Below, piece after piece: positions 5,175-52,466 of a stretch of DNA of 64,000 bases (position 1 is its first letter; each line of letters begins with the position of its first letter). The position numbers and the translations under genes were made by a program. The notes below the pieces were generated by a model that had not been told where the DNA came from, made no database searches, and saw only the letters and a program-made list of their open reading frames with translations. Origin of the DNA: Iphione sp. A-MEVVRFRX5. Its lineage: Eukaryota. Location of the stretch: the NCBI GenBank assembly GCA_976226885.1, contig OZ320321.1, positions 56,544,001-56,608,000 on the forward strand, written 5' to 3'.

Positions 5175-8100
5175 ATTAGACACCCCCCCACCCACTGATT
5201 CAATAAAAATGCACAGCACCGCACTACAATGTACACACACAAACACATGTAAAGAAACCTGGCCTTAACCTACCTTTGATGCAGTCCGAAAATGTTGACA
5301 TTTAATCCCTTTAAGATAAGCTATGATGGATAGATGGTCTATTAAATGCTGACTCCCAAGGGACCCCTTCGTACCTCTCTATTAGTAACGAGTGGTATCC
5401 ACTTACAACAAACCATTTGTACATTGTCGATATACGCCTTGAATAGAATTGATTGATTTTCAACTGAAATGTCTGCTATCAGACCTGATACATGTTATAT
5501 TCGAATAAATGCATGCTGTGCCTTAGCGTGAAGGTACCGAGCGATCGGCGAAGCTTTACGATATATAATGCTTCCCAGAAAACCCGCCATAATGATGCAC
5601 TTGCTGGCCTAATAAAATGTCGTCTGGGAGCCCTAGCAAAATGTCCAGAGCTCCCTGTCCTTCTGAAAGGTCAACCCGGTGTTCTAGAAGTTTACATCAT
5701 CCATCACTGGCTGCGTTCCTGCGATCCAGTTGAATGTACATTGCCAATTCAGCCTTATTTTCATTCTAATGGAATGATTTACCATGCATCTCCGACAGTG
5801 TGTGCATGCCTTTTAGGAGTAGGCCTCGGTGTGGACGTGTCCGCATCTACACACACATAGACTTCATGTCGAGCATGAGGCATTCTTGTGCGGATACGGA
5901 AGGAGATGCAGATACCCATATTTTTTTCAAAAACTATTGTAAGCTTTTGTCATTGCCCCGTGTACATGTACATATCTGCAGCGGCATGGTGCCAATATGG
6001 ACACATGGGGTTATATGTCTGTAGTCATACTCTGAAGTATATGTGGATTTAGATATTTCCACCTTAAGAAGAAAAAAAACAATCGAATATAGTCATTTTG
6101 GTTGACCAATTAAGGAAGTGTAGCTGAGTGACTCGGTGTTCTCCCCTTTGCACAGTGCTCATAGTTCTTCCTTTTCATAACGTTAACAAGATCATACGTG
6201 GAGGTATCGCAGTGTAGTCTGTTTCTGAGTAATGAACGGTACGACGCACGCCGAACCAGTACAATGTCAATGACAATCGGTGGGGGAATGTTCACCCTGA
6301 TGCCGCAAACTGCTCCGACCATCCTTTCGTCACATATGATTAATACTCGGGTGCATCCTGCGGACCCTAAACCCCGCCTATTTCTTAGGCAAAATTCTGC
6401 AATAAAGAGAAACAACATACATGTCACCGCCAAGTGCCAAAACAATCACACGAACCCACTGCGGATCTTCATTAGTACAACACCCAGTAGATTCGACCCT
6501 ACGGTAGTTCCATTATTGTTGCCACCTGCATGTAAAGTTTGACCCATGCCGAGAACATGACATCTGTCAGCATATAGTAGCTCACTGTCACCAGTTCTGC
6601 ACAGGACCTCTTTCAGATGTGGATGCAGGTCATACTTCGCTTTAAGAATTTGCGTTAAAATTACCTCGCACTTTTCTGCCCATAATGTAGTCGTTTTGAT
6701 ACGCGATCCTATTCTCCTTGCATGGAATCCGGAAGCACAATTGTTTAACTCTCGCCCAGAACGAGAGTCGCCACAGATGCGCGATTTCGCATCCTGGAAC
6801 GCCGTCTCCGCTGAATCAAAACAAATGCTATTGAAAATAAGTGGAGATCGCTCCATTGTAGAAAGACCAATCGCATTGTTGCTGAAATGACATTTGTTGT
6901 CATTCCCCAGACGAATAGAGTCTTCCAGCGGGACAATAGTGGCAGGTAGCTCAGCAGCATCACACGGAGTGTACGTCTCTCCTTCAATCACTAAGTCGAC
7001 ACCTTTTACCGTCGCGCGCTTGCCTTGCTTTTTAGCAGACGAAGCATGGCGTATCTGTAATCGGTGCGTATCCAATGCCCTGATTGGGATGTCTTCCTTT
7101 ACAAATGTCTTGTTATATTTATTAGACTTGGCCAAATTTGGTTTGTTCTTCAAGGCTTTGTTCCGTGCTCCCTTCGAACGAAGTCTTACCTTCAGCCGAT
7201 TGCCAGTATCGCTCCCCGAAAGCTTGTTGACACTCACGACATCGCCCCTGTCAATGTCAAGGATGTTCTCTAGTAAAGAGCGCGATTCTTCCTCAACATC
7301 GGCATCGTTGTTACCTGGTAGACCATCCACAATCAGACTGTCTGCCCTGTCCTCAATTTCATAACGTGATAGCTCATGATCCAGTCGATCACATTTTTTC
7401 ATCAAGTACGTTGTCCTAGCTTCGAGCGAGAGTAAGTGATTCTTGATTAACTTGTCAAAACATTGTGACATTGTGTCCTTCCAGGCAGCCAGCTCTCCAT
7501 TTTGCCTCCGTAGCTCAGCCACCTCAGTCTGTAGACTCTTGAACAGTAGAAGCAAGTCCTGCTTATCACCTGTGGAGTCCTCCCCTTCACCGGTAGTTTC
7601 GTCAATGCTTTCCGTTATCGGACTGTCAAGTGTCACGCCATCATCAGCATTGACACCGACATCATGTGTTGCGCCTTTGTTTACGTCCACCGGTGCCGGT
7701 GCCGTGTCTTTGCCTCCTCTATTATCGCCCCTGTTGCTATCACTGCAACTTTCGAGGGTTGACCCGCTTAAAGTCTCATTCCTCCCCCTGTTTCGAGTGG
7801 AGGACCTCAATACCGGAGTATTGATCCTCCCTTTAGACTTATTTCCGGACTGTGATCTCATAATTACTCGTCAACAGGTGCCTTGGTGTGTGTGGGCGAA
7901 AAACACGCTTCTAGCTCAACGCCATCACTGTTTCTGGTTCTGGTATACCTACAATATTGTAGGTATACTTCATGTACATTGAATTCTCACAATGGTAGCA
8001 ACACATGGAGGGCGTATTCGGATGCGGGGAATACCTGACACTACCCTCGAGATCCCTGTGTGTACACATCTATAGGAACTTCGTGTTTTTAAGTGCACCT

Positions 8101-8184
8101 TAGTGCAGTGGTTTAAGTGGTGACTTGGAAGGTCCGCCTTCTTCGATTACTACAGCACAGACGTGTGTAAGCCAGAGGGAGAGA

Positions 8185-8252
<68 letters not shown>

Positions 8253-11200
8253 CAGAGAAAGAGAGAAAAAAAGTATTTGCCCTGCACACACACATGTACT
8301 CACACTTGGAGGGTTTCTGAGAGGGAATCTGTGCTGAATTAAGGCACTTGTGATGTTTACAAATCGGCGCAGTGATACACCTCTTGATGACGTCATCACT
8401 GGGAAACCCCCTTGAACTGAGAAAATAGTTCAATGTAATATTCTGTTTTTACTATAAACACTCATAACCAAGATAAAATATACAGAGCTTGGCTTCCTTT
8501 GCAATATTTTCACTGAATACATTAGTTACCATAAAAAAATAATCTCTCTGTTTTAACTCTCATGTGTGTGAGACCTACTCCCCAGTGCCGTACTACTTTC
8601 AGGCAACGTTTTATATAGGTAGTGTAATAATTCCGGTTGTAAGCAAGTGGTCAGTCGAAAAATCCATCAATCGTCTATTGTACATGGAGGATTGGTTTCG
8701 GAACAAGGCTCGTTCTGAGCAGACGTGATCAGGGAAAACAACCGACCTCATGGCCCATCCACAGAGAATAAACCTAACAACACATTAACAGCCTTTAAAC
8801 CCAGTCCGTTCCATATAGAGAGGTATAGAGCGGTACCATCTGTCAAAAGTGCTGGTAGTCGTCGATTGTTTTATAAGGCAGTGGCAGAAATCAGCCACGT
8901 GCCCTGCCGTAGACACGTGTTCTGGTGCACGCACACTCTGGTATAGGGCGTGTGCTGTTTACAGTCGCCGGGGAAAGATGCAGATAATACTTTTCGTATA
9001 GACGCACATATCGATGACCTTGCCAAGCTTATCGGTGTTAGCACCTTTCGCCGACCGAGTCAATAGTGTAAAGCCTCTACAGATCAATCACATTGTTATC
9101 ATGCACGAAAAACATGTATTAATGTATATATATTATCCATTACTTCTTTCACTGAAGTTAGTTGTGCGTGTAGTTTTTCACTAACTTTATGCAGGATCAT
9201 TATCCCTAATTTTTTTTATCAAAGTCTTTAATAGACCAGTCAATTATATGACTGACGACAGGCCTCGTACACCAGTCATACCAGGAAAGAATTAGTGGCC
9301 GCTCAATGTTACATGCAGTTTTAATTCCGCATAATTAGCATCATGCACAATACCCTGCGAGGAAAGCACTGCTTATTGCATGCATTTTATCCCTGAATTA
9401 TTGAACGATCAAGTTGAACTAGGGGGGAAAAAAATTAAAAACGGCGTTCCTTTCGTTAAAGTTCTGTTTTTGAGATAATCTATGTAAACACGCGACGGGC
9501 CAAGATCAAGATTTCAGGTCTAATATATCAGCGGCCATGAGAGAGTTTCTGATACATACAAAGGGCAAAGTTTGAGCGCTACTGTATACAGAGGGGCTGG
9601 AGCAGCATGGAGATACAGAGCGAGCGAGCGTGGTGGGCGGTACAGTAGACCTATCATGAAAGGCATGAATTATTAAGAAGCATGTATGTTCGAACATAGG
9701 CGCGCGGGGGGACAGAGTACACCTGCATTAAAATCGTTGACCTCTAGCGCGCTCTCCTGCGTATACGTGAGGTCGAAGCCTTTTCGGATCGATTCCGTCA
9801 AATAGCACGAGATCAAAGGCAGGAGAGGTGTGTCTGTAGACTATGACTGCGAGTAAATATACCAGCAAAACAAATCTTCCCCGGATATGTCCTGAAACAT
9901 TGGAAATCGTGCAGAAACTGGTGCGCTGGAGCATTTTTTTCAAGTACAATTTCGCTGATTATGAACCTCTGAGGCACCGTATTTTATACCAAGTGCTTTA
10001 AGAATACACTACAATTCCAATCCCGGTGCAGTCAAAAAATATTTTTTTTTAAAAAAAAGGGATGCACATGTCGTGAGTCCAGTCCCCGTCTACCCTATAC
10101 ATGTACTTAAAGATCTCAGTAGAACTAATGGAGAAATTTCTTAGCGGAGTGAACTGATGACCTCACAACAGTTTCCCATGTGGTCCAGAGTATGCAGGTG
10201 CTTGGGTATTTTATTTTGGTAATGGTAATGTTTTATTCAGCAGAACTTCCCTTCATATTCAGTATGCCTTTCATTTTGCATATAACGAGCTGACTGCCAA
10301 AGTAGAACGTCAAAACGGTATGTGTAATGAAGAACTCCCAACGGTCAGACATTAACGTAACATCATTTTATTATAATTTTTAGTTAACATAGACTGCTTG
10401 TATGAAACCTTTGCCATGTCATTGTATTATTCTTCTCCTTACTAGTGCAGGTATGTTGATTGTCCTTGTCCGTGTTTTGCTCTTTTTAAAATATAGAAGC
10501 AGGTGGCAGAAGTTTAGCGGATAAACATTTTGAAAACCTCGTACACTGCCCTCACTTGCATTTATTTCACCTTAAATGTAAACAACCTTGAAGCCCAAAT
10601 ATGGACATGTTTTGTGAAACCTCACTACTTTGAGTGCTAAAAAAAAACTCCTCGATATTTCGAAAATAATGAGGTAACAGTGGTTTCTTTGCCGACGTTA
10701 TGTAATGATTCTAGTACTTCAGATGATTCAGTACGCGGCAGACGACATTTTTGCAACCACAGAGGTGTCGAAGTATTGAAGCCTGACTGTACATATATTA
10801 GTGCTGAGCTGGGTGCTCTTCCCCGGTGTGTCATACAGGGTGGTTAGTCATGCTGGCTGTTGTACGCTATGTACGCACACAATTCTACGGTGAATACCCC
10901 GGTGATGAACGCGTGCGGTTTGAACAGCTTGCACGCGGTGACAGGCACCGTGACGATCTGTCTTCAGGGGCGGAGGAGGTGCTGCAGCAGCAGCGGGGGG
11001 AAAGAGACAAGAGACATGAGTTCCGTGGTGGAACAGGGGGGGGGGGCGAGCAGGTGGAAGGGCGGGCGTGGTATGGTGGAGGAAAACCCGCCTCACCTGT
11101 ACGGCGCCGCCGCTGATGGAGCATTGGACAGTCACACCGTCAGCGCCGAGTTGTCATCCCCCCACCCCGCCCACCAACACGGCCCAGCGCACACACACAC

Positions 11201-47600: not shown

Positions 47601-50600
47601 TATTTTAGTCAGTAGTGGAACTATTATTCAGTGTTTGTATGTCTTTGGTTTTACTTGCAGTTTGCGACATATAGAGCGGGAGTACCAAGTTCTCAAAGAA
47701 GAGGCTCCCCGGCTTCGAGCAGAGATCGACAAACTTAGAAAGGTAAAGTGTTCATCCCAACATGTCTCTCCTTACTAATCGGGAAAAATCCCTTCATTGG
47801 CAGCAGATCATGGTGCGGTGATGGCGACAAAGCTGTTTTCCAACATTGTGGGAAACTCTGTCATCTAGTGAACGTATCTTGACAGCAGCAAATAAAAAAC
47901 AGCTATAATAGCATTAACATACAAGCCTGCTGCGATCTTAGGCTACATTTCCATGCGCCCGTAGATGCCGCCCGTATTTCGCCCGAAACAACAGAAAGGC
48001 TATATTTTTTTTCCAAATTACAACGACCCCAGAACACAGTGCCCGTGTTTTTTTGTCAGGACATATGCACACACACTCTAATGGACACACACACGGACAC
48101 ACACTCAATAGGTGTTACTCTAAAAATAAAGAAGTTGTATTTACTATGATGGAAATAGCAGTCACATTAAGGACTAATCTGAGTACAGGTATACCTCTCT
48201 GAACAAATCCTCTGAGAACGAAGCTTCTTAATAATGAGGTCAGGGGTAATAGTGGGAAAAATATCCACTGAAGATCAACTATCAGTGTCCCCGAAAGTAA
48301 ATATACCATGCTTCTGTCAACAAAGTTTCTGATATCGAATGGATTCCTTGGAACAACTTTTGTTCTTTAAGAGAGGTACATGTATACCGGTCATTGTAGT
48401 TTTCCAGGTATTTTCATGAGAGTAAATTATGGCAGAGAATTGCAGATTTTTCCAATTGTAGTCATTCTCCTTATGTTGTAAATGTCCCTCTATCCAATGC
48501 TCTATATTATGTTTTTCTATCCTTGTCTCCAGGACAATGTGCACCTGGAGGAGAAGCTCAGTGAGACGCAGTACCAGCTGCTCTCCATGGCTGAGGAACA
48601 CCAGGACCTGCAGGACCGCTCCAGGGGCTACAACGACGACCTCCGACAGGAGCGCGACGTACACTCACAGGTACGCGCTATCAGCACCACAGGTGGTGTA
48701 GTGAGTCGGACTAAACATTTGATAAAACTGGCGCGACGAACGTAGCGGAAATAAAAATATTGGGAAAAAATGACAATATCGTTAACCCAGGATGTATGAA
48801 TGAGTGAATAAATAAATAGATAGATGATAAGGCATTTGGCCACATAAATCTGAACATATTACCTAATTGTTTCCTCTGTGTCGGGTCCTAGTTGTTGGAC
48901 GAGTTAACGAAGGAGCTGGAGGAGTTGAGGAGTTACAAGCTGGAGATGGAGGGGCGGAGTCGTTCGCACAGTCAGTCGCCCGCCGACATCAAAATGGCGC
49001 ATCGACGAGAGCTCGAGATGAAAGTCATCCAACTCAAAGAGGTCGGTGAAAGGATGTATACACGACAATAGTCATCTTAAATGTTTTATTCCTGGTTAAA
49101 ATGGGACTCTTCACCAAGTATGCGGTGCTGCCTCCTACTGATAGCCAACCTCATCATCATTTCTATCTTGTAATGCAGTATAGTTTGGTTTAGTTCTCAG
49201 GGTTCTCACTGTGATTGAGAGCACGTTCATAAATGGTTTAGGGGTTTCCAGAAGAAGCGAGTCTATGTTGCATTAATGTTTCGGTGGAACTAAACACCAC
49301 ACACACTGAGCTCGTGCTAGTCTTACTTGCTCCTCGTCCCTGTAAGGTTACTGTGTAACTAGTCTTATTTGCTCATCATACCCTTCAGGTTGCTGTACAA
49401 CTCTATAACATTTCACGTAGATGTCATCCTGTTTGAGGCCAAAATCAAAAGCTCAGTCCCCTGATTTGTTCTTGTTCTCTTTCCCTCGGTGAATCGATCC
49501 ATTTATCATCCCCTCCTCCTTCTCCTCCTGTCCCGCAGGAGAACGCGAGGCTGAAGGAGCAGAACGATGACCTGCACGCCCAGCTGCTCAACACGCGCCT
49601 GGAGGAGGGGCGCACGCTCCTCCAGAACGGCGCCCAGGCCTCCCTGGCCGCCGAGATGGAGACCCTACCGCGCGACGAGGTACGAACATCTGCTTGCCTT
49701 ACTCTTTAGTTGGTGTTATAAATAGAGGGACGTCCGAGGCTTCTGGTCGACTGGTGGCATGGAGGGTTGTCTCGAGGTGGAGGGGGACTTCCTCGCTTCG
49801 TTTCATGTGACAGCTGACGGGCCGGGGTTGATTGACACTTGGTTTTATACCAGGGAAAATCAACTGGAGTATGGAACGGGAAGGTTCTTTAGGGAGGGTC
49901 TTTCCTCTTGGTTTCTTCTGTGAACGTCTGTCTCGGCTGGTTTTGGTGTGGGAAAATCGACTGGAGTATGGAACGGGAAGGTTCTTTAGGAAGGTTCTTT
50001 CCTCTTGGTTTCTTCTGTGAACGTCTGTCTCGGCTGGTTTTGGTGTGGACACCCTTGGATGACTGTGTCTGATCAACACGGTGACGGACGAAATGCTGAA
50101 CAGCACATTTGTATTCTCAAATTTGGCCGTATCTAAATTGAACAATTATGTAGTCGGCTTAAGCTAACGTCCTTTTCCTGCATTCAGTCAGTTTCACATT
50201 CCTCTTATTTGTAATTTATTTTACAGAACTTTTTACAACAACCAAAAAAAAGAACAGAAAGTTATATCCCCAATTGATAGCATGTTCTTCTTCCATCTTC
50301 TTCTTCGGTTCTGTGTTGCCCTTGGGCAACCGAAGCTGCACTGTTCTCTGGAACAGGCACCCCCACTCCATCTGACTCTATGCACCGTATGCTCCCTCAG
50401 CCACTATCCAGCATCGACCTTTATGTTCTCGGAGATGTTTAACTACTGTTCAGATTGGTGATATGTAAACGTGTACCGCATATATAAATGTTTTGCATGA
50501 TCTGCATTTTGAGGCTGACAAATGTACTGTGCTGCGAAGCCATAAGCCTACGAGATCTTGGCACCGATTTTAAGCTTTGCCTTGCTATGAATATATCATT

Positions 50601-52466
50601 ATTGCCCTGCTTTCAGTTTATTTATAATACGTCAGTAAACACCAACAAGGTTTTCTCTGCGCAGAACGAAAATTTCTACTGCCTTTTGCTGCAGTTATTA
50701 TTGATTTATATTAAACTTATTTCTCAGCTTCATAACTTATGTTTTGGCTCATTTTAAAGCTGTTCGTATAAGATCATGTGTCCGAAAGAAAGGAGCTGCT
50801 ACAGATGACCCAGAAGTTTTCATAGAAGGAATCATGTTTGTAGAAGGTCAAAAATGTTTTATACTTTCCAGAATTCGGTTGAACGACAGCAGAAACAGGA
50901 GGTAGTTCTGCTTGCCTCTCTGTCTTTATTACTCAAGCTTTGTAAAGTATTAATATCATCAGATAAATATACAATGAGATACTTATTAGCTTCATCTATG
51001 TGAATGTGGTGTTTGCTTCACTTGTCAAAAGTTTCTCTTTATATCTCTCATTTCATATAGCATTCTTTCAAATGTTTCTGACATTATCAAGGTCAACTTG
51101 ACCCTATTTATGTTTTTATCTCTGTAGTAGTTTTTTTCCTTCCATATTCTTTTTGTTTAACAAAACTGTTGGAGTTTTGTTGAACAGATGAACATGGTAT
51201 ATATTTATACTTTTGACAAGTTCCTACTGGGAGATAAATCTGTAGAACCTAGGCTGGAGCGACATAAAGCTTCGTTACCTAGGCAGTAACTTTATCCTGG
51301 CAGTGCCAAAATACTTGTATGAAGTTAATGGTTTAGTGGTCATTTTACTTTCGTCTGCACTATTCCCTGCTCTAAAATCTAACCATATACCCTCGCTGCG
51401 CCGGTAAAGTCTGCTGATGTAGCTCCAGTCGTGTTGCTATACTAAGCGACCAAAAGCTACCTAATCGCTAACTTCCCTACTGCCTTAAAGTCTTGATCGT
51501 AATTCTTAATCCTCTCAGACAACATTTCAATCAAAATATCATAATCCCTGCTTTCATGTATCTAATATATCTACATACCATTACTATAGAAGATAAACCC
51601 CGTTTCACTATGAACTAATATTCTGTGACGTACCTGAAGTAGAGTCGTAACTCATCTGAAATGACGTACATTTTAACATATTATTCCCTATTTCGGTCTC
51701 TCAACACTGAGTCATGAATCAATTTTCAAATGATCACTTGTTAAACGTTAGTCTCGAAAGTAAGGGAGTAGAGAAAGAAAAGATCCGTGAAAGTGAGACG
51801 GTATGTATTTCCGATTAAGAAACCGTCACAAGTAGATTAACTTTTTTGTAAGATAGATTTCCAGAAGTCCCACTTGTCGTTCCGCCTAGGTATACTGATT
51901 CCCAAATTGATTTAGTTGTTTCTCTTTTTTATTTTAGTTACCCAATGATTCGAAAGTGAGCTTAACCTGGGTGGAAAGTGTAATAAGCTCATCTGTTTTC
52001 AGTTATTTTCATATTTTGAAGTCACAAGGAAAATATGTTTCTGGGTTTGTCCTTCTAATCGACACGTTTAATGGAATTCGTTGGACTCTTGTATATTATG
52101 TTGGAAATGTATTAAATACTTTTTCTTATTTATGTATCGACAGCTCTTTACCTTGGATCATTTCTTTAGCATAACCTTCCTTTTTATGATGACGCTGTGG
52201 CATTTTAACCGTGTCACATTTACATACGTGCGAGGATAGTTCGATTTAATTTGTTTGCACAACTTTTTTGTCAATATCATTTGTCTAACCAACACGTTCT
52301 ATAATTTCAGTTGCTACAAGCCCTGAAGGAACAACAGGAGGCCAATGGCAAGTTACGGGAGTATATCGACAGAATCATGCTCCAAATCATCGAGAAGGAC
52401 CCATCCATTTTGGAAGTCAACAATCGGTCACCGAGCAAACAAAAGTCGTCTGCTAAGAAGTCGTAG
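95..52466 (+). CDS. RAB11FIP3/4: Class II Rab11 family-interacting protein (FIP3/FIP4/nuf-like), 15 exons, 1779 nt CDS, 592 aa
   Basis: Exons 95-229, 12914-13013, 14295-14404, 28321-28583, 28984-29103, 40892-40927, 41790-41898, 44023-44126, 44940-45030, 45449-45492, 47661-47742, 48533-48670, 48892-49041, 49539-49679, 52311-52466 join in frame, all GT-AG with matching phases. N-terminal EF hands (RLRAVFDLCDVQKQGFITVRHF; LDSEGDGRIYFSDFCRG), FEDYGE motif, long coiled coil, and C-terminal FIP-RBD (SLAAEM...LKEQQEANGKLREYIDRIMLQIIEKDPSILEV) recognised from family knowledge. Confidence 0.95.
4694..5268. mobile_element. Candidate non-autonomous DNA transposon (MITE), 567 bp, TTAA-flanked with GGCC termini
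   Basis: TTAA at 4694-4697 and 5265-5268; termini GGCCCAGTTTC and (reverse complement) GGCCAGGTTTC, 9/11 identical; no coding capacity. Confidence 0.4.
5141..5175. repeat. (GC)n(AC)n microsatellite
   Basis: Read directly. Confidence 0.95.
6446..7861 (-). CDS. 471-aa intronless ORF: LINE ORF1-like (coiled coil, RRM-like, CTD) fused to a C-terminal NADAR/YbiA-like domain; probably transposon-derived; nested antisense in FIP intron 1
   Basis: Uninterrupted ORF. aa 1-99 low complexity. aa ~100-170 heptad coiled coil. aa ~171-305 show ORF1/Transposase_22-like motifs (EDRADSLIVDGLP...LKVRLRS...TFVKEDIP...KQGKRATVKGVDLVIEGETY). aa ~324-469 show the NADAR pattern (SAETAFQDAK...ARRIG...W...ILKAKY.LHPHLKEVLCRTG...GSNLLGVVLMKIR). 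Domain calls are by recognition, not by search. Confidence 0.8.
   Translation of the reverse strand: MRSQSGNKSKGRINTPVLRSSTRNRGRNETLSGSTLESCSDSNRGDNRGGKDTAPAPVDVNKGATHDVGVNADDGVTLDSPITESIDETTGEGEDSTGDKQDLLLLFKSLQTEVAELRRQNGELAAWKDTMSQCFDKLIKNHLLSLEARTTYLMKKCDRLDHELSRYEIEDRADSLIVDGLPGNNDADVEEESRSLLENILDIDRGDVVSVNKLSGSDTGNRLKVRLRSKGARNKALKNKPNLAKSNKYNKTFVKEDIPIRALDTHRLQIRHASSAKKQGKRATVKGVDLVIEGETYTPCDAAELPATIVPLEDSIRLGNDNKCHFSNNAIGLSTMERSPLIFNSICFDSAETAFQDAKSRICGDSRSGRELNNCASGFHARRIGSRIKTTTLWAEKCEVILTQILKAKYDLHPHLKEVLCRTGDSELLYADRCHVLGMGQTLHAGGNNNGTTVGSNLLGVVLMKIRSGFV
8175..8266. repeat. (GA)n/(GAGACA)n compound microsatellite
   Basis: Read directly. Confidence 0.95.
8385..8398. promoter_or_regulatory. 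Extended palindromic CRE/ATF-like site TGATGACGTCATCA
   Basis: Perfect 14-bp palindrome around the TGACGTCA core; function untested. Confidence 0.35.
12504..12750. repeat. Two-copy tandem duplication, ~123-bp period, rich in GTCT
   Basis: cagtaaatt(c/g)acagatactacctgtccgtccgtctgtctg starts at 12524 and 12647. Confidence 0.85.
12914..13013 (+). CDS. RAB11FIP3/4: FIP exon 2 (EF-hand 2)
   Basis: Acceptor ctttgcacag|; DLSDIVAVLDSEGDGRIYFSDFCRGVKQITELT; donor G|gtaaca, phase 1. Confidence 0.93.
13832..13866. repeat. (CA)n microsatellite
   Basis: Read directly. Confidence 0.95.
14295..14404 (+). CDS. RAB11FIP3/4: FIP exon 3
   Basis: Acceptor tttacttgcag|; GPGTPVSPIGSPQFPLTHHIGSEETLVPLDDDTISNG; donor |gtgagt; phase 1 to 0 fits neighbours. 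Confidence 0.82.
17519..17688. repeat. CT-rich tract ending in a pure (TC)n microsatellite
   Basis: Read directly. Confidence 0.95.
21681..21694 (+). promoter_or_regulatory. CTCF-like motif ACTGCAGAGGGCGC
   Basis: 12/14 match to CCASYAGRKGGCRS. Confidence 0.3.
27484..27507 (+). mobile_element. Possible 3' tail of a truncated non-LTR retroelement (AATAAA followed by TTTGAA repeats)
   Basis: aataaactttatttgaatttgaat; no coding remnant identified upstream. Confidence 0.2.
28321..28583 (+). CDS. RAB11FIP3/4: FIP exon 4 (acidic/Pro-rich linker)
   Basis: Acceptor ccttcag|; TQETSELSTYNEYDMMTDED...DDVDSAISGKSSDPNEQF; donor AG|gtgagc, phase 2; GC-rich coding-like composition. An in-frame tandem acceptor 6 nt downstream (acgcag) is possible. 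Confidence 0.88.
28984..29103 (+). CDS. RAB11FIP3/4: FIP exon 5 (FEDYGE motif)
   Basis: Acceptor ctgtggcag|; REQEVSEEEERFEDYGEADELESETDSHGTPSHGPKLNT; donor GG|gtaagt; symmetric phase 2-2. Confidence 0.9.
30115..30510. repeat. Minisatellite, ~95-98-bp unit, about 3.5-4 diverged copies
   Basis: ttggttga...tgagtgagag...cgcctgatgc recurs at 30180, 30275, 30372, 30470. Confidence 0.9.
34596..34636. repeat. (GT)n/(GCGT)n microsatellite
   Basis: Read directly. Confidence 0.95.
36278..36291 (-). promoter_or_regulatory. CTCF-like motif CCACCAGGCGGCGC
   Basis: 13/14 match to CCASYAGRKGGCRS; lies in a CpG-rich patch. Confidence 0.45.
40320..40810. repeat. GT-rich degenerate minisatellite with ~123-bp higher-order period
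   Basis: actatggatgtgtgtgtc at 40530 and 40653; gtggatctctg.gtgtttggatctgt twice; interspersed (GT)n. Confidence 0.8.
40892..40927 (+). CDS. RAB11FIP3/4: FIP exon 6 (36-nt mini-exon)
   Basis: Acceptor cgtttcag|; SCRRVTSNALA; donor AG|gtgagt; phase 2-2. Joined to exon 7 it gives RVTSNALASQLY, resembling the segment that precedes the coiled coil in FIP3/4/nuf. Confidence 0.85.
   Translation, partial: VMSPGHKQCPG
41790..41898 (+). CDS. RAB11FIP3/4: FIP exon 7
   Basis: Acceptor gtcttcag|; QLYRGIGSSAGTSRRSSCSDEVFDDIDGNLMELNDK; donor |gttagt, phase 0. Confidence 0.88.
44023..44126 (+). CDS. RAB11FIP3/4: FIP exon 8 (coiled coil)
   Basis: Acceptor ttctcccag|; VKKLEGQIGNLTDGQSKSEEKHIRLKEENGILIT; donor CG|gtaagc, phase 2. 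Confidence 0.92.
44940..45030 (+). CDS. RAB11FIP3/4: FIP exon 9 (coiled coil)
   Basis: Acceptor ttttcgatcag|; RIHTLEEQLRDVEFKANSTLEEERRKQRELM; donor |gtgagt, phase 0. Confidence 0.93.
45449..45492 (+). CDS. RAB11FIP3/4: FIP exon 10
   Basis: Acceptor cctctttgcag|; SRSDRAQEIELLTI; donor AG|gtaaga, phase 2. Confidence 0.88.
47661..47742 (+). CDS. RAB11FIP3/4: FIP exon 11
   Basis: Acceptor ttttacttgcag|; LRHIEREYQVLKEEAPRLRAEIDKLRK; donor |gtaaag, phase 0. Confidence 0.92.
48533..48670 (+). CDS. RAB11FIP3/4: FIP exon 12
   Basis: Acceptor ttgtctccag|; DNVHLEEKLSETQYQLLSMAEEHQDLQDRSRGYNDDLRQERDVHSQ; donor |gtacgc. Confidence 0.92.
48892..49041 (+). CDS. RAB11FIP3/4: FIP exon 13
   Basis: Acceptor gtcctag|; LLDELTKELEELRSYKLEMEGRSRSHSQSPADIKMAHRRELEMKVIQLKE; donor |gtcggt. 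Confidence 0.9.
49539..49679 (+). CDS. RAB11FIP3/4: FIP exon 14
   Basis: Long pyrimidine tract then cccgcag|; ENARLKEQNDDLHAQLLNTRLEEGRTLLQNGAQASLAAEMETLPRDE; donor |gtacga. Confidence 0.94.
49853..50048. repeat. Near-identical 97-bp direct tandem duplication
   Basis: gggaaaatc.actggagtatggaacgggaaggttctttagg...tctcggctggttttggtgtgg begins at 49853 and 49950. Confidence 0.93.
52311..52466 (+). CDS. RAB11FIP3/4: FIP exon 15 (Rab11-binding domain, stop)
   Basis: Acceptor aatttcag|; LLQALKEQQEANGKLREYIDRIMLQIIEKDPSILEVNNRSPSKQKSSAKKS then TAG; matches the FIP-RBD consensus (YID.....I....P.ILEV). Confidence 0.95.
   Translation: MLQALKEQQEANGKLREYIDRIMLQIIEKDPSILEVNNRSPSKQKSSAKKS

What the first reader, a model, noticed from the sequence alone, without database searches (positions are those of the whole stretch)
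6446..7861. Intact LINE ORF1-like protein fused to a NADAR (YbiA/DUF1768-like) domain, antisense in FIP intron 1
Seen: an uninterrupted 471-aa minus-strand ORF with coiled coil, RRM/CTD-like ORF1 motifs and a C-terminal block carrying the NADAR pattern. Established: ORF1 proteins are RNA-binding RNP chaperones, and some CR1/L2/RTEX ORF1s carry accessory domains such as an SGNH esterase or PHD finger. NADAR enzymes are N-glycosidases; bacterial and phage members remove ADP-ribose from guanine in DNA as DarT1 antitoxins, and YbiA cleaves riboflavin-pathway intermediates. Inference: a mobile element whose nucleic-acid-binding protein carries an ADP-ribose eraser or reader, possibly countering host PARP marking of element RNA or DNA, or a domesticated copy of one. 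I do not recall this fusion being characterised, but could not check.
Basis: partly seen in the sequence, partly recalled or inferred. Interest (0 to 1): 0.85.

Follow-up and report, generated by a model that had tools for sequence, protein, structure and literature searches.

The report
Truncated LINE copy: ORF1 with NADAR
This is a broken copy of a jumping gene (a LINE) whose RNA-packaging protein is still intact and ends in a NADAR enzyme-like domain; the design is real and old, but a 2025 paper already noted it, this copy cannot move by itself, and the domain lacks several residues that known NADAR enzymes need.

Summary
Window 6446-7861 (-) is an uninterrupted 471-codon ORF. Its product has a disordered basic N-terminus, a long coiled-coil helix, an RRM and a CTD that superpose on human LINE-1 ORF1p, and a C-terminal NADAR domain (Pfam E=1e-15; Z=19.2 to a solved NADAR).

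It is the ORF1 of a very large, old LINE family in this genome. Intact relatives carry ORF1-NADAR, then a separate SGNH-fold ORF, then an endonuclease/RT ORF2. The window copy is only a fragment: the first 87 codons of the SGNH ORF follow, homology stops at 6186 against unique DNA, and no ORF2 exists in the 64 kb. It is a DNA-level singleton.

Its private substitutions show purifying selection, but so do those of a dead relative, so domestication is not shown.

The NADAR active site is non-canonical. The class-defining Glu is an invariant Tyr family-wide, the Trp is Leu, and this copy also has Cys for a near-invariant Asp. The first Glu and the Lys are kept.

The fusion is widespread in public data and was mentioned in one sentence of a 2025 paper (PMC12477816). 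This scan has flagged it many times on other DNA of this genome. Function is untested. Expression could not be checked. 'FIP intron 1' is only partly verified.

The parts
6446..7861 (-). ORF1 of a LINE, 471 codons plus a TGA stop (6446-6448), intact
   Evidence: ORF listing. (about 4,000 first-look relatives in the same genome; 90 scored, all near full length).
7577..7861 (-). ORF1 aa 1-95: disordered, basic N-terminal region with a conserved motif around P16, R19 and S20
   Evidence: pLDDT below 50 over residues 1-95. P16, R19 and S20 are at least 90% conserved among 28 paralogs.
7349..7573 (-). ORF1 aa 97-171: a single long helix, read as a coiled coil (the trimerisation module in L1 ORF1p)
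   Evidence: Helix 97-171 at high pLDDT. Weak profile matches (E about 0.005-0.1) to coiled-coil chains. Its C-terminal part (from residue 125) is included in the alignment to the L1 ORF1p trimer. The oligomeric state was not tested.
7094..7339 (-). ORF1 aa 175-256: RRM domain (beta-alpha-beta-beta-alpha-beta)
   Evidence: Secondary structure. VIA Z of 8.5-10.2 to many RRMs over model residues about 170-260.
6947..7093 (-). ORF1 aa 257-305: CTD, the most conserved part of the protein (mean pairwise identity 60%)
   Evidence: The alignment to human L1 ORF1p runs through the CTD, model 125-331 against chain 107-323. Conservation figures.
6449..6931 (-). ORF1 aa 311-471: NADAR domain with a non-canonical active site (E352 and K359 kept; Y430, C434 and L437 in place of the E, D and W of YbiA-class enzymes)
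   Evidence: Pfam. Profile vs YbiA E=1e-6 and vs 8bau E=0.0055. Foldseek 8bau E=1.7e-7. VIA 8bau Z=19.2 and YbiA Z=15.3. hhalign register. Residue counts.
6186..6445 (-). Remnant (first 87 codons or so) of the element's second ORF, an SGNH/GDSL-fold protein. Here it is in frame with ORF1 after the single TGA. Homology to all relatives ends at 6186.
   Evidence: tblastn. Junction comparison. Alignment A3. Fold of a full-length relative: Foldseek GDSL esterases, E=6.7e-7.
7862..7906 (-). Probable 5' UTR. DNA similarity (76%) to the closest full-length relative on C22 continues to about 7906, so the 5' end of the element lies between 7906 and about 7950.
52308..52418 (+). Context only: exon encoding the Rab11-binding domain (RBD-FIP) of the host FIP gene, on the opposite strand and 44 kb away
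   Evidence: PF09457, 50.7 bits, above the cut-off.

Best explanation
The ORF is the first gene (ORF1) of a LINE retrotransposon. The family's intact members carry ORF1, then a separate SGNH-fold ORF, then an endonuclease/reverse-transcriptase ORF2. The window copy is a dead-end fragment. It keeps the 5' UTR, a complete ORF1 and the first third of the SGNH ORF, and it lost everything downstream of 6186 by deletion or rearrangement after insertion. It therefore cannot retrotranspose by itself.

Shown: ORF1p has the L1-type build (coiled coil, RRM, CTD). Inferred by analogy with L1 ORF1p: it oligomerises and coats the element's own RNA. Shown: the C-terminal NADAR domain is a conserved, selected part of the family's ORF1p. 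Inferred: it is carried into the RNP, where it recognises an ADP-ribose- or NAD-derived N-glycosidic group on RNA or on the nascent cDNA.

The family has an invariant Tyr where every characterised NADAR class has Glu, Asp or His, and Leu where YbiA has a critical Trp. I therefore consider ligand binding or an altered hydrolytic chemistry more likely than canonical guanine de-ADP-ribosylation. In this copy, with Cys at the D130 position, activity is more doubtful still. The ORF is probably still open because the copy is young in neutral terms.
For: ORF and domains. Three-ORF layout in 10 relatives, with ORF2 matching PF03372, PF14529 and PF00078. SGNH fold of the middle ORF. Window copy lacks ORF2 and ends at 6186. 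The flank beyond 6186 is unique DNA.

Family size and age: about 4,000 first-look candidates, 90 scored at 33-61% identity. Synonymous sites are saturated between subfamilies while NADAR dN is only 0.14-0.29, giving omega about 0.09-0.14 where it can be computed. NADAR (45% mean identity) is more conserved than the coiled coil (35%) or the RRM (31%).

Window-branch substitutions in ORF1: 16 synonymous and 10 nonsynonymous, omega 0.18, p=2e-5 against neutrality. So little of its divergence is neutral decay.

Active-site register. Counts. Roles of these residues: PMC11543638 section 12 and PMC9303266.
Against: No biochemical or expression data exist, and no sequencing run could be listed. A LINE copy that keeps its 5' end but lacks its 3' end cannot arise directly by target-primed reverse transcription, so a later deletion has to be assumed. 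No second copy of this subfamily (90% or more identical) exists in the 1.18-Gb assembly, which is odd for a young insertion and leaves room for selection in place. Invariant Y430 and D432 could form a working alternative catalytic pair, so 'not a canonical eraser' is an inference from alignment, not a measurement.
Confidence: 0.75

Rival explanations
1. Domesticated gene. The host has kept this single-copy ORF1-NADAR protein for its own use, as mammals kept the L1 ORF1-derived gene L1TD1 (from my own knowledge), while the rest of the element decayed away.
For: It is a singleton at the DNA level: the N-terminal half has no relative above about 76% identity. The 471-codon ORF is intact although ORF2 is gone. 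Omega is 0.18 on its private branch in the ORF1 part, against 0.53 (not different from neutral) in the stranded SGNH remnant.
Against: The pseudogene relative L032 shows the same contrast on its own branch (0.10 against 0.43), so the pattern reflects family-wide constraint before insertion, not selection in place. The estimated neutral share of the divergence is only about 1-2%, at which an open 1.4-kb frame is unremarkable. There is no expression or orthology evidence. Many other ORF1 copies in the genome are also intact.
Confidence: 0.1
2. Functional eraser (a separate axis: what the family's NADAR does). The domain is an active hydrolase that strips ADP-ribose from bases of the element's RNA or cDNA, countering host ADP-ribosyltransferases such as PARPs or pierisin/CARP-1-type guanine-specific enzymes known from shellfish.
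For: The NADAR fold matches strongly (Z=19.2). The E43 and K50 equivalents (E352, K359) are kept in this copy, and E in 24 of 28 paralogs. A eukaryotic NADAR not linked to a toxin-antitoxin system hydrolyses guanine-ADP-ribose, and CARP-1 and the pierisins write that same linkage (PMC11543638). Selection on the domain is strong.
Against: The position of the class-defining catalytic residue (E125, or D171 in E. coli C7 NADAR, where D171A and D171N lose activity) is Tyr in 28 of 28 paralogs. W133 is Leu in 27 of 28. K50 is kept in only 16 of 28. This copy also has Cys at D130. No writer enzyme was looked for successfully in this genome.
Confidence: 0.2
3. A still-mobile non-autonomous element: an ORF1-only unit copied in trans by the ORF2 protein of related LINEs.
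For: Its closest DNA relatives (about 15 copies, 73-89% identical) form a repeat unit of about 2.9 kb that lacks ORF2 but has its own 3' region.
Against: The window copy shares neither that 3' region nor any other element 3' end. It stops inside the SGNH ORF against unique DNA and exists once only.
Confidence: 0.03

Closest known systems
NADAR-bearing ORF1 of Tx1-classified LINEs of Crassostrea gigas in Repbase, mentioned in PMC12477816 (Genome Biol 2025)
   Same: A YbiA-family NADAR domain inside a LINE ORF1 protein of an invertebrate. That paper also speculated about processing of the RNA intermediate.
   Different: That paper gives one sentence and a supplementary alignment, with no anatomy, active-site analysis, selection test or count. 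I could not compare sequences directly because Repbase is not available here. Family members here carry an extra SGNH-fold ORF, and their ORF2 is short (about 930 aa), so the Tx1 assignment is not confirmed for this family.
Human LINE-1 ORF1p (PDB 2ykp, 2yko, 2ykq)
   Same: Coiled coil, RRM and CTD in the same order. Structural match Z=11.6 over 183 residues. Encoded upstream of an APE-RT ORF2 in intact relatives.
   Different: Only 11-14% sequence identity and no Pfam Transposase_22 match. L1 ORF1p ends after the CTD, whereas this protein continues into a 160-residue NADAR domain.
P. nicotianae NADAR (PDB 8bau) and E. coli YbiA (PDB 2b3w)
   Same: Same fold (Z=19.2 and 15.3). The E43/E48 and K50/K55 equivalents are present.
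   Different: The hallmark Glu (E125/E124) is Tyr, D130/D129 is Cys in this copy, and W133/W132 is Leu. The domain is fused to an RNA-binding protein rather than standing alone or joined to riboflavin enzymes.
Esterase (SGNH) ORF1 of CR1/L2 LINEs, e.g. ZfL2-1 (PMC3905857; PMC4120745)
   Same: A LINE-encoded SGNH-fold protein upstream of ORF2.
   Different: Here it is a separate second ORF placed after an L1-type ORF1. The Ser of the GDS-type block I is present in only 3 of 12 relatives covering it. Only its first third survives in the window.
C. elegans SNA-3 (PMC9303266)
   Same: An animal protein in which NADAR domains work inside an RNA-protein particle.
   Different: SNA-3 is a host gene specific to nematodes, has three NADAR domains, and keeps the E and D-x-x-W residues whose mutation inactivates it. 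There is no relation to transposons.

Membership tests
L1-type (type II) LINE ORF1p | Coiled coil followed by RRM and CTD | tested here: met
   Model. Foldseek to 2ykp/2yko/2ykq, E=4e-6 to 1e-4. VIA Z=11.6, 183 residues, model 125-331.
L1-type (type II) LINE ORF1p | Sequence match to Pfam Transposase_22 | tested here: not met
   No hit at E up to 1. The similarity is structural only.
L1-type (type II) LINE ORF1p | Encoded upstream of an APE-RT ORF2 in the same element | tested here: met
   Met in 10 relatives and in another assembly. Not met in the window copy itself, which has lost ORF2.
L1-type (type II) LINE ORF1p | Homotrimer formation and RNA chaperone activity | not tested
   Inferred from the fold only.
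NADAR superfamily (PF08719) | Profile match above the curated threshold, and the NADAR fold | tested here: met
   58.7 bits against 35.1. hhalign to YbiA, probability 97.3%. Z=19.2 to 8bau.
NADAR, YbiA class (active N-glycosidase) | Class-defining catalytic Glu (E125 in P. nicotianae, E124 in YbiA) | tested here: not met
   Tyr in 28 of 28 paralogs, by two independent alignments.
NADAR, YbiA class (active N-glycosidase) | D-x-x-W motif (D130 and W133), whose homologues are needed in SNA-3 | tested here: not met
   C434 and L437 in this copy. The family has D in 26 of 28 and L in 27 of 28.
NADAR, YbiA class (active N-glycosidase) | First Glu and phosphate-binding Lys (E43, K50) | tested here: met
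   E352 and K359 in this copy. E in 24 of 28 and K in 16 of 28 paralogs.
DarG1 / BC4488-class NADAR antitoxin | Asp at the D171 position and linkage to a DarT1 toxin gene | tested here: not met
   Tyr at the aligned position. The gene neighbours are LINE ORFs.
Any NADAR hydrolase | Hydrolysis of an N-glycosidic ADP-ribose or riboflavin-intermediate substrate | not testable with these tools
   Needs enzymology.
Autonomous LINE | Own endonuclease/RT ORF and a 3' end | tested here: not met
   No ORF2 match anywhere in the 64 kb. Homology ends at 6186 inside the second ORF.
Domesticated transposon gene | Selection in place, expression, orthologs at the same locus | tested here: inconclusive
   Omega is 0.18 on the private branch, but the same pattern is seen in a dead relative. 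No runs could be listed. No close protein exists in public sets.

The most novel reading that the evidence does not exclude
LINEs of this lineage carry a working eraser, or a high-affinity reader, of nucleic-acid ADP-ribosylation on their RNA-coating protein. It would act as a transposon counter-defence against host ADP-ribosyltransferases, for example the guanine-specific CARP-1/pierisin type known from shellfish, using a new Tyr/Asp active-site variant. On this reading the window copy could be an exapted single-copy survivor.
Probability: 0.15. Interest if true: 0.8.

Novelty: new member of a known kind. Interest (0 to 1): 0.38.

Why it matters
NADAR domains are rare in animal proteins (PMC9303266), yet here they sit on the RNA-packaging protein of thousands of LINE copies and have been kept by selection across lineages old enough that synonymous sites are saturated. 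That points to an unrecognised step in retrotransposition, or in host defence, involving an ADP-ribose- or NAD-derived mark on nucleic acids. This particular copy adds little. It is a truncated singleton, useful mainly as a natural 'ORF1-only' allele and as a candidate for a domestication test. The most useful result for the family is the active-site finding (invariant Tyr in place of the catalytic Glu/Asp/His), which tells experimenters not to assume canonical guanine de-ADP-ribosylation.

Tried and rejected
(1) The word-indexed protein search with the whole ORF1 returned nothing. The exhaustive profile search later found thousands of hits, so the blank was a sensitivity limit.

(2) RNA and DNA run searches: none was listed, so expression is untested and read laying was not used.

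(3) I first read the shared end point at 6186 as an element terminus. I rejected this because the relatives continue past it into conserved SGNH-ORF sequence.

(4) A 'short-form CTD+NADAR ORF1' suggested by 255-aa open frames: the case examined (C4:4.13 Mb) is a frameshifted full-length ORF1.

(5) The sequence profile of the middle ORF against PDB gave nothing convincing. Only the fold search identified it as SGNH.

(6) LINE clade: ORF2 is about equally distant from R2 and L1 reverse transcriptases in PDB, no 3' microsatellite or poly(A) tail was seen, and source names of ORF2 homologs were uninformative. The clade is unresolved. PF14529 and the SGNH ORF hint weakly at the Jockey/CR1 side, while the paper calls the oyster families Tx1.

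(7) Pfam on ten other long ORFs in the window found nothing above threshold.

(8) Looking for a guanine-ADP-ribosyltransferase 'writer' in earlier scan notes found nothing. I had no verified family accession or sequence with which to search the genome.

(9) Cluster look-ups of top public hits gave no names or taxa.

Branch counts were parsimony tallies only.
Full report
OBSERVATION. The minus-strand ORF at 6446-7861 exists exactly as described: ATG start, 471 codons, TGA stop. The next longest ORF anywhere in the 64-kb window is 229 aa, so its length is far beyond chance. Pfam finds one domain, NADAR (PF08719), over aa 323-468, E=1.1e-15, 58.7 bits against a curated cut-off of 35.1. NCBIfam's riboflavin-type N-glycosidase model matches below its cut-off (50.5 against 73.7 bits). 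No ORF1 family (Transposase_22) is detected by sequence.

DOMAIN ANATOMY. I aligned the protein with 27 intact paralogs from the same genome (A1) and folded it. Mean pLDDT is 79, and 80-96 from residue 100 onward. Residues 1-95 are disordered. Residues 97-171 form one long helix. Residues 175-256 form a beta-alpha-beta-beta-alpha-beta unit, and 260-304 a helix plus three strands. Residues 316-470 form an alpha-rich domain.

Foldseek against PDB puts three things at the top: the P. nicotianae NADAR (8bau, E=1.7e-7), the human LINE-1 ORF1p trimer (2ykp/2yko/2ykq, E=4e-6 to 1e-4) and E. coli YbiA (E=9e-6). VIA-align gives the ranges. 8bau scores Z=19.2 (rmsd 3.3, 159 residues, model 311-471). YbiA scores Z=15.3 (model 310-471). 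L1 ORF1p scores Z=11.6 (183 residues, model 125-331 against chain 107-323). Generic RRMs score Z 8.5-10 over model residues about 170-260. The protein is an L1-type ORF1p (coiled coil, RRM, CTD) extended by a NADAR domain.

THE ELEMENT. The protein has about 4,000 first-look relatives in the window's own 1.18-Gb genome. The 90 that were scored are nearly all full length, 33-61% identical, and mostly open. Wider flanks around ten of them show a constant layout: ORF1 of about 470 aa ending in NADAR, a second ORF of 215-260 aa, and a third of about 930 aa. The third ORF matches Exo_endo_phos, Exo_endo_phos_2 and RVT_1. The second ORF has no Pfam or PDB sequence match. Its AlphaFold2 model (pLDDT 81) is an SGNH/GDSL hydrolase fold (Foldseek E=6.7e-7, all top hits from that family). 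The Ser of the GDS-type first block is present in only 3 of the 12 aligned sequences that cover it.

THE WINDOW COPY IS A FRAGMENT. tblastn with a relative's three proteins finds ORF1 and only the first 80-100 residues of the SGNH ORF (down to about window 6186), and no ORF2 anywhere in the window. In this copy the SGNH remnant is in frame with ORF1 after the single TGA. About 15 DNA relatives (73-89% identical) match window 6186-7190, and all appear to stop at 6186. Inspection shows that they continue beyond that point into sequence conserved among themselves, so the break is private to the window copy.

The DNA beyond it (5200-6185) is essentially unique in the genome. Upstream, similarity to the nearest full-length relative (on C22) reaches about 7906. 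The 200-bp stretch at 7952-8150 is an unrelated low-copy repeat. The copy therefore spans roughly 6186 to 7906-7950. It must have lost its 3' two-thirds after insertion, because target-primed reverse transcription always starts from the 3' end (established LINE biology).

RELATIVES AND AGE. No other copy in the assembly shares the N-terminal half at the DNA level, and the nearest protein is 61% identical. The closest DNA relatives (L063, L064) are a repeat unit of about 2.9 kb: a different 5' segment, then CTD-NADAR, an intact SGNH ORF and a 3' region, with no ORF2. This is probably a non-autonomous deletion derivative. The window copy keeps the full ORF1, which is the ancestral state.

I used those copies as sister and outgroups, with tree ((window, L032),(L033, L035, L036)), and assigned substitutions to branches by parsimony. 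In the ORF1 part, the window branch has 16 synonymous and 10 nonsynonymous changes (omega 0.18, p=2e-5 against neutrality). In the SGNH remnant it has 6 and 10 (omega 0.53, not significant). The branch leading to L032, which is a pseudogene, shows the same contrast (0.10 and 0.43). The pattern therefore reflects constraint in active elements before insertion, not selection at this locus. From these figures the neutral share of the window copy's divergence is of the order of 1-2%, and at that level an open 1.4-kb frame is not surprising.

FAMILY-LEVEL SELECTION ON NADAR. Among the 28 paralogs the CTD is the most conserved part (60% mean pairwise identity). NADAR follows at 45%, ahead of the coiled coil (35%) and the RRM (31%). 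Between subfamilies, synonymous sites are saturated (dS above 1 or undefined) while NADAR dN is 0.14-0.29, giving omega about 0.09-0.14 where computable. The domain is thus an old and selected part of these elements.

ACTIVE SITE. A HMMER profile alignment to 8bau and YbiA and an independent hhalign to E. coli YbiA (probability 97.3%, E=2e-11) give the same register:
- E352 aligns to E43 (P. nicotianae) / E48 (YbiA).
- K359 aligns to K50 / K55.
- Y430 aligns to E125 / E124.
- D432 aligns to YbiA E127.
- C434 aligns to D130 / D129.
- L437 aligns to W133 / W132.

Across the 28 paralogs these positions read E in 24, K in 16, Y in 28, D in 28, D in 26 (Cys only in this copy and its nearest relative) and L in 27.

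According to PMC11543638, E125 defines the YbiA class and is replaced by Asp in the DarT1-linked class and by His in phage NADARs. Mutating the equivalent D171 in E. coli C7 NADAR abolishes efficient activity, and K95 (= K50) is essential. PMC9303266 reports that the E and D-x-x-W residues are critical in YbiA, and that mutating their homologues inactivates SNA-3. The LINE domain is therefore not a canonical member of any characterised catalytic class. The invariance of Y430 and D432 argues that the pocket still does something. Whether that is binding or a variant chemistry cannot be decided here.

DISTRIBUTION AND LITERATURE. A profile of the whole protein, searched against 1.84 billion representative proteins, finds 2,034 hits at E of 1e-10 or better. 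Most of the best 150 are 400-500 aa proteins matched in one stretch from the coiled coil to the end of NADAR, and none is close (best 170 bits). One of them, on an 880-kb contig of another assembly, lies directly upstream of a 956-aa APE-RT ORF with no SGNH ORF between them. The ESM Atlas holds all-NADAR eukaryotic clusters of 415-489 aa, labelled Annelida where a phylum is known.

The only published mention I found is one passage in PMC12477816 (Genome Biol 2025). It says that ORF1 proteins of several Tx1 LINE families of Crassostrea gigas in Repbase appear to contain YbiA-family NADAR domains, and it speculates about RNA processing. Two papers on ORF1 architecture do not mention NADAR. This scan has already recorded the fusion many times on other DNA of this genome (108 notes). 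Those notes agree with what I found.

HOST GENE. An exon encoding the Rab11-binding domain of a FIP protein lies at window 52308-52418 on the + strand. The LINE ORF is therefore antisense to that gene and 44 kb upstream of its last exon. I found no exon upstream of 6446. The G+C-rich stretch at 11-13 kb could be the first exon, so the copy may lie upstream of the gene rather than in intron 1.

VERDICT. The copy is a truncated, non-autonomous singleton of a huge, ancient LINE family. The NADAR domain is selected but non-canonical. Domestication and an eraser function remain possible but unsupported. The design has been noted in print, so this is a new member of a known, barely studied kind.

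Noticed in passing
L063:7363-9600 and L064:2552-5674 (G000 C4:16.63 Mb, C14:0.80 Mb): The window copy's closest DNA relatives form a repeat unit of about 2.9 kb: a distinct 5' segment of about 740 bp, CTD-NADAR (ORF1 from about aa 226), an intact SGNH-fold ORF and a 3' region, but no ORF2. About 15 copies at 73-89% identity to the window. Probably a non-autonomous LINE derivative.
   Followed up: partly
window 6446-6448, against L002 and L023: The junction between ORF1 and the SGNH ORF varies. In the window the second ORF is in frame after a single TGA. In the closest relatives it is in another frame and abuts or overlaps the end of ORF1, and it often has no ATG near its start. How the second ORF is translated is unknown.
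   Followed up: no
window 8350-8633: A short interspersed repeat of about 280 bp with at least 25 copies at 81-92% identity across many contigs (SINE- or MITE-like). A (CT)n microsatellite lies just before it, at about 8.2-8.3 kb.
   Followed up: no
window 7952-8150: A 200-bp stretch with a single 93%-identical match elsewhere (C17:24128719-24128921). It has no LINE coding similarity next to it.
   Followed up: partly
window 52308-52418 (+): Exon encoding an RBD-FIP (Rab11-binding) domain, 50.7 bits. The only other such hit in the genome is at C19:22020731-22020865.
   Followed up: partly
window 11000-13000: G+C rises to 0.52-0.55 against about 0.40-0.45 around it, with a 180-aa + strand ORF (11987-12529) that contains a long acidic run. 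It may be a CpG-island-like first exon of the host gene. No Pfam match.
   Followed up: no
window 49699-50145 (-): A 148-aa ORF with a weak, sub-threshold match to NDC10_II (E=0.0048, 16.4 bits against a 26.3-bit cut-off). May be a remnant of another mobile element.
   Followed up: no
ORF1 aa 14-22 (window about 7796-7822): A short N-terminal motif (P16, R19 and S20 at least 90% conserved among 28 paralogs that otherwise share 24% identity in this region). It sits inside the disordered tail and its role is unknown.
   Followed up: no
P0004 (1075 aa, ENA) and P0103 (2914 aa, NCBI): Public proteins much longer than ORF1 that hold several stretches, or an embedded stretch, matching the NADAR part of the profile. 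These are other NADAR architectures and were not examined.
   Followed up: no
L063:2861-4803 (-): Gag-pol-like ORFs with a CCHC zinc knuckle (an LTR retrotransposon) lie downstream of the 2.9-kb unit on C4.
   Followed up: no
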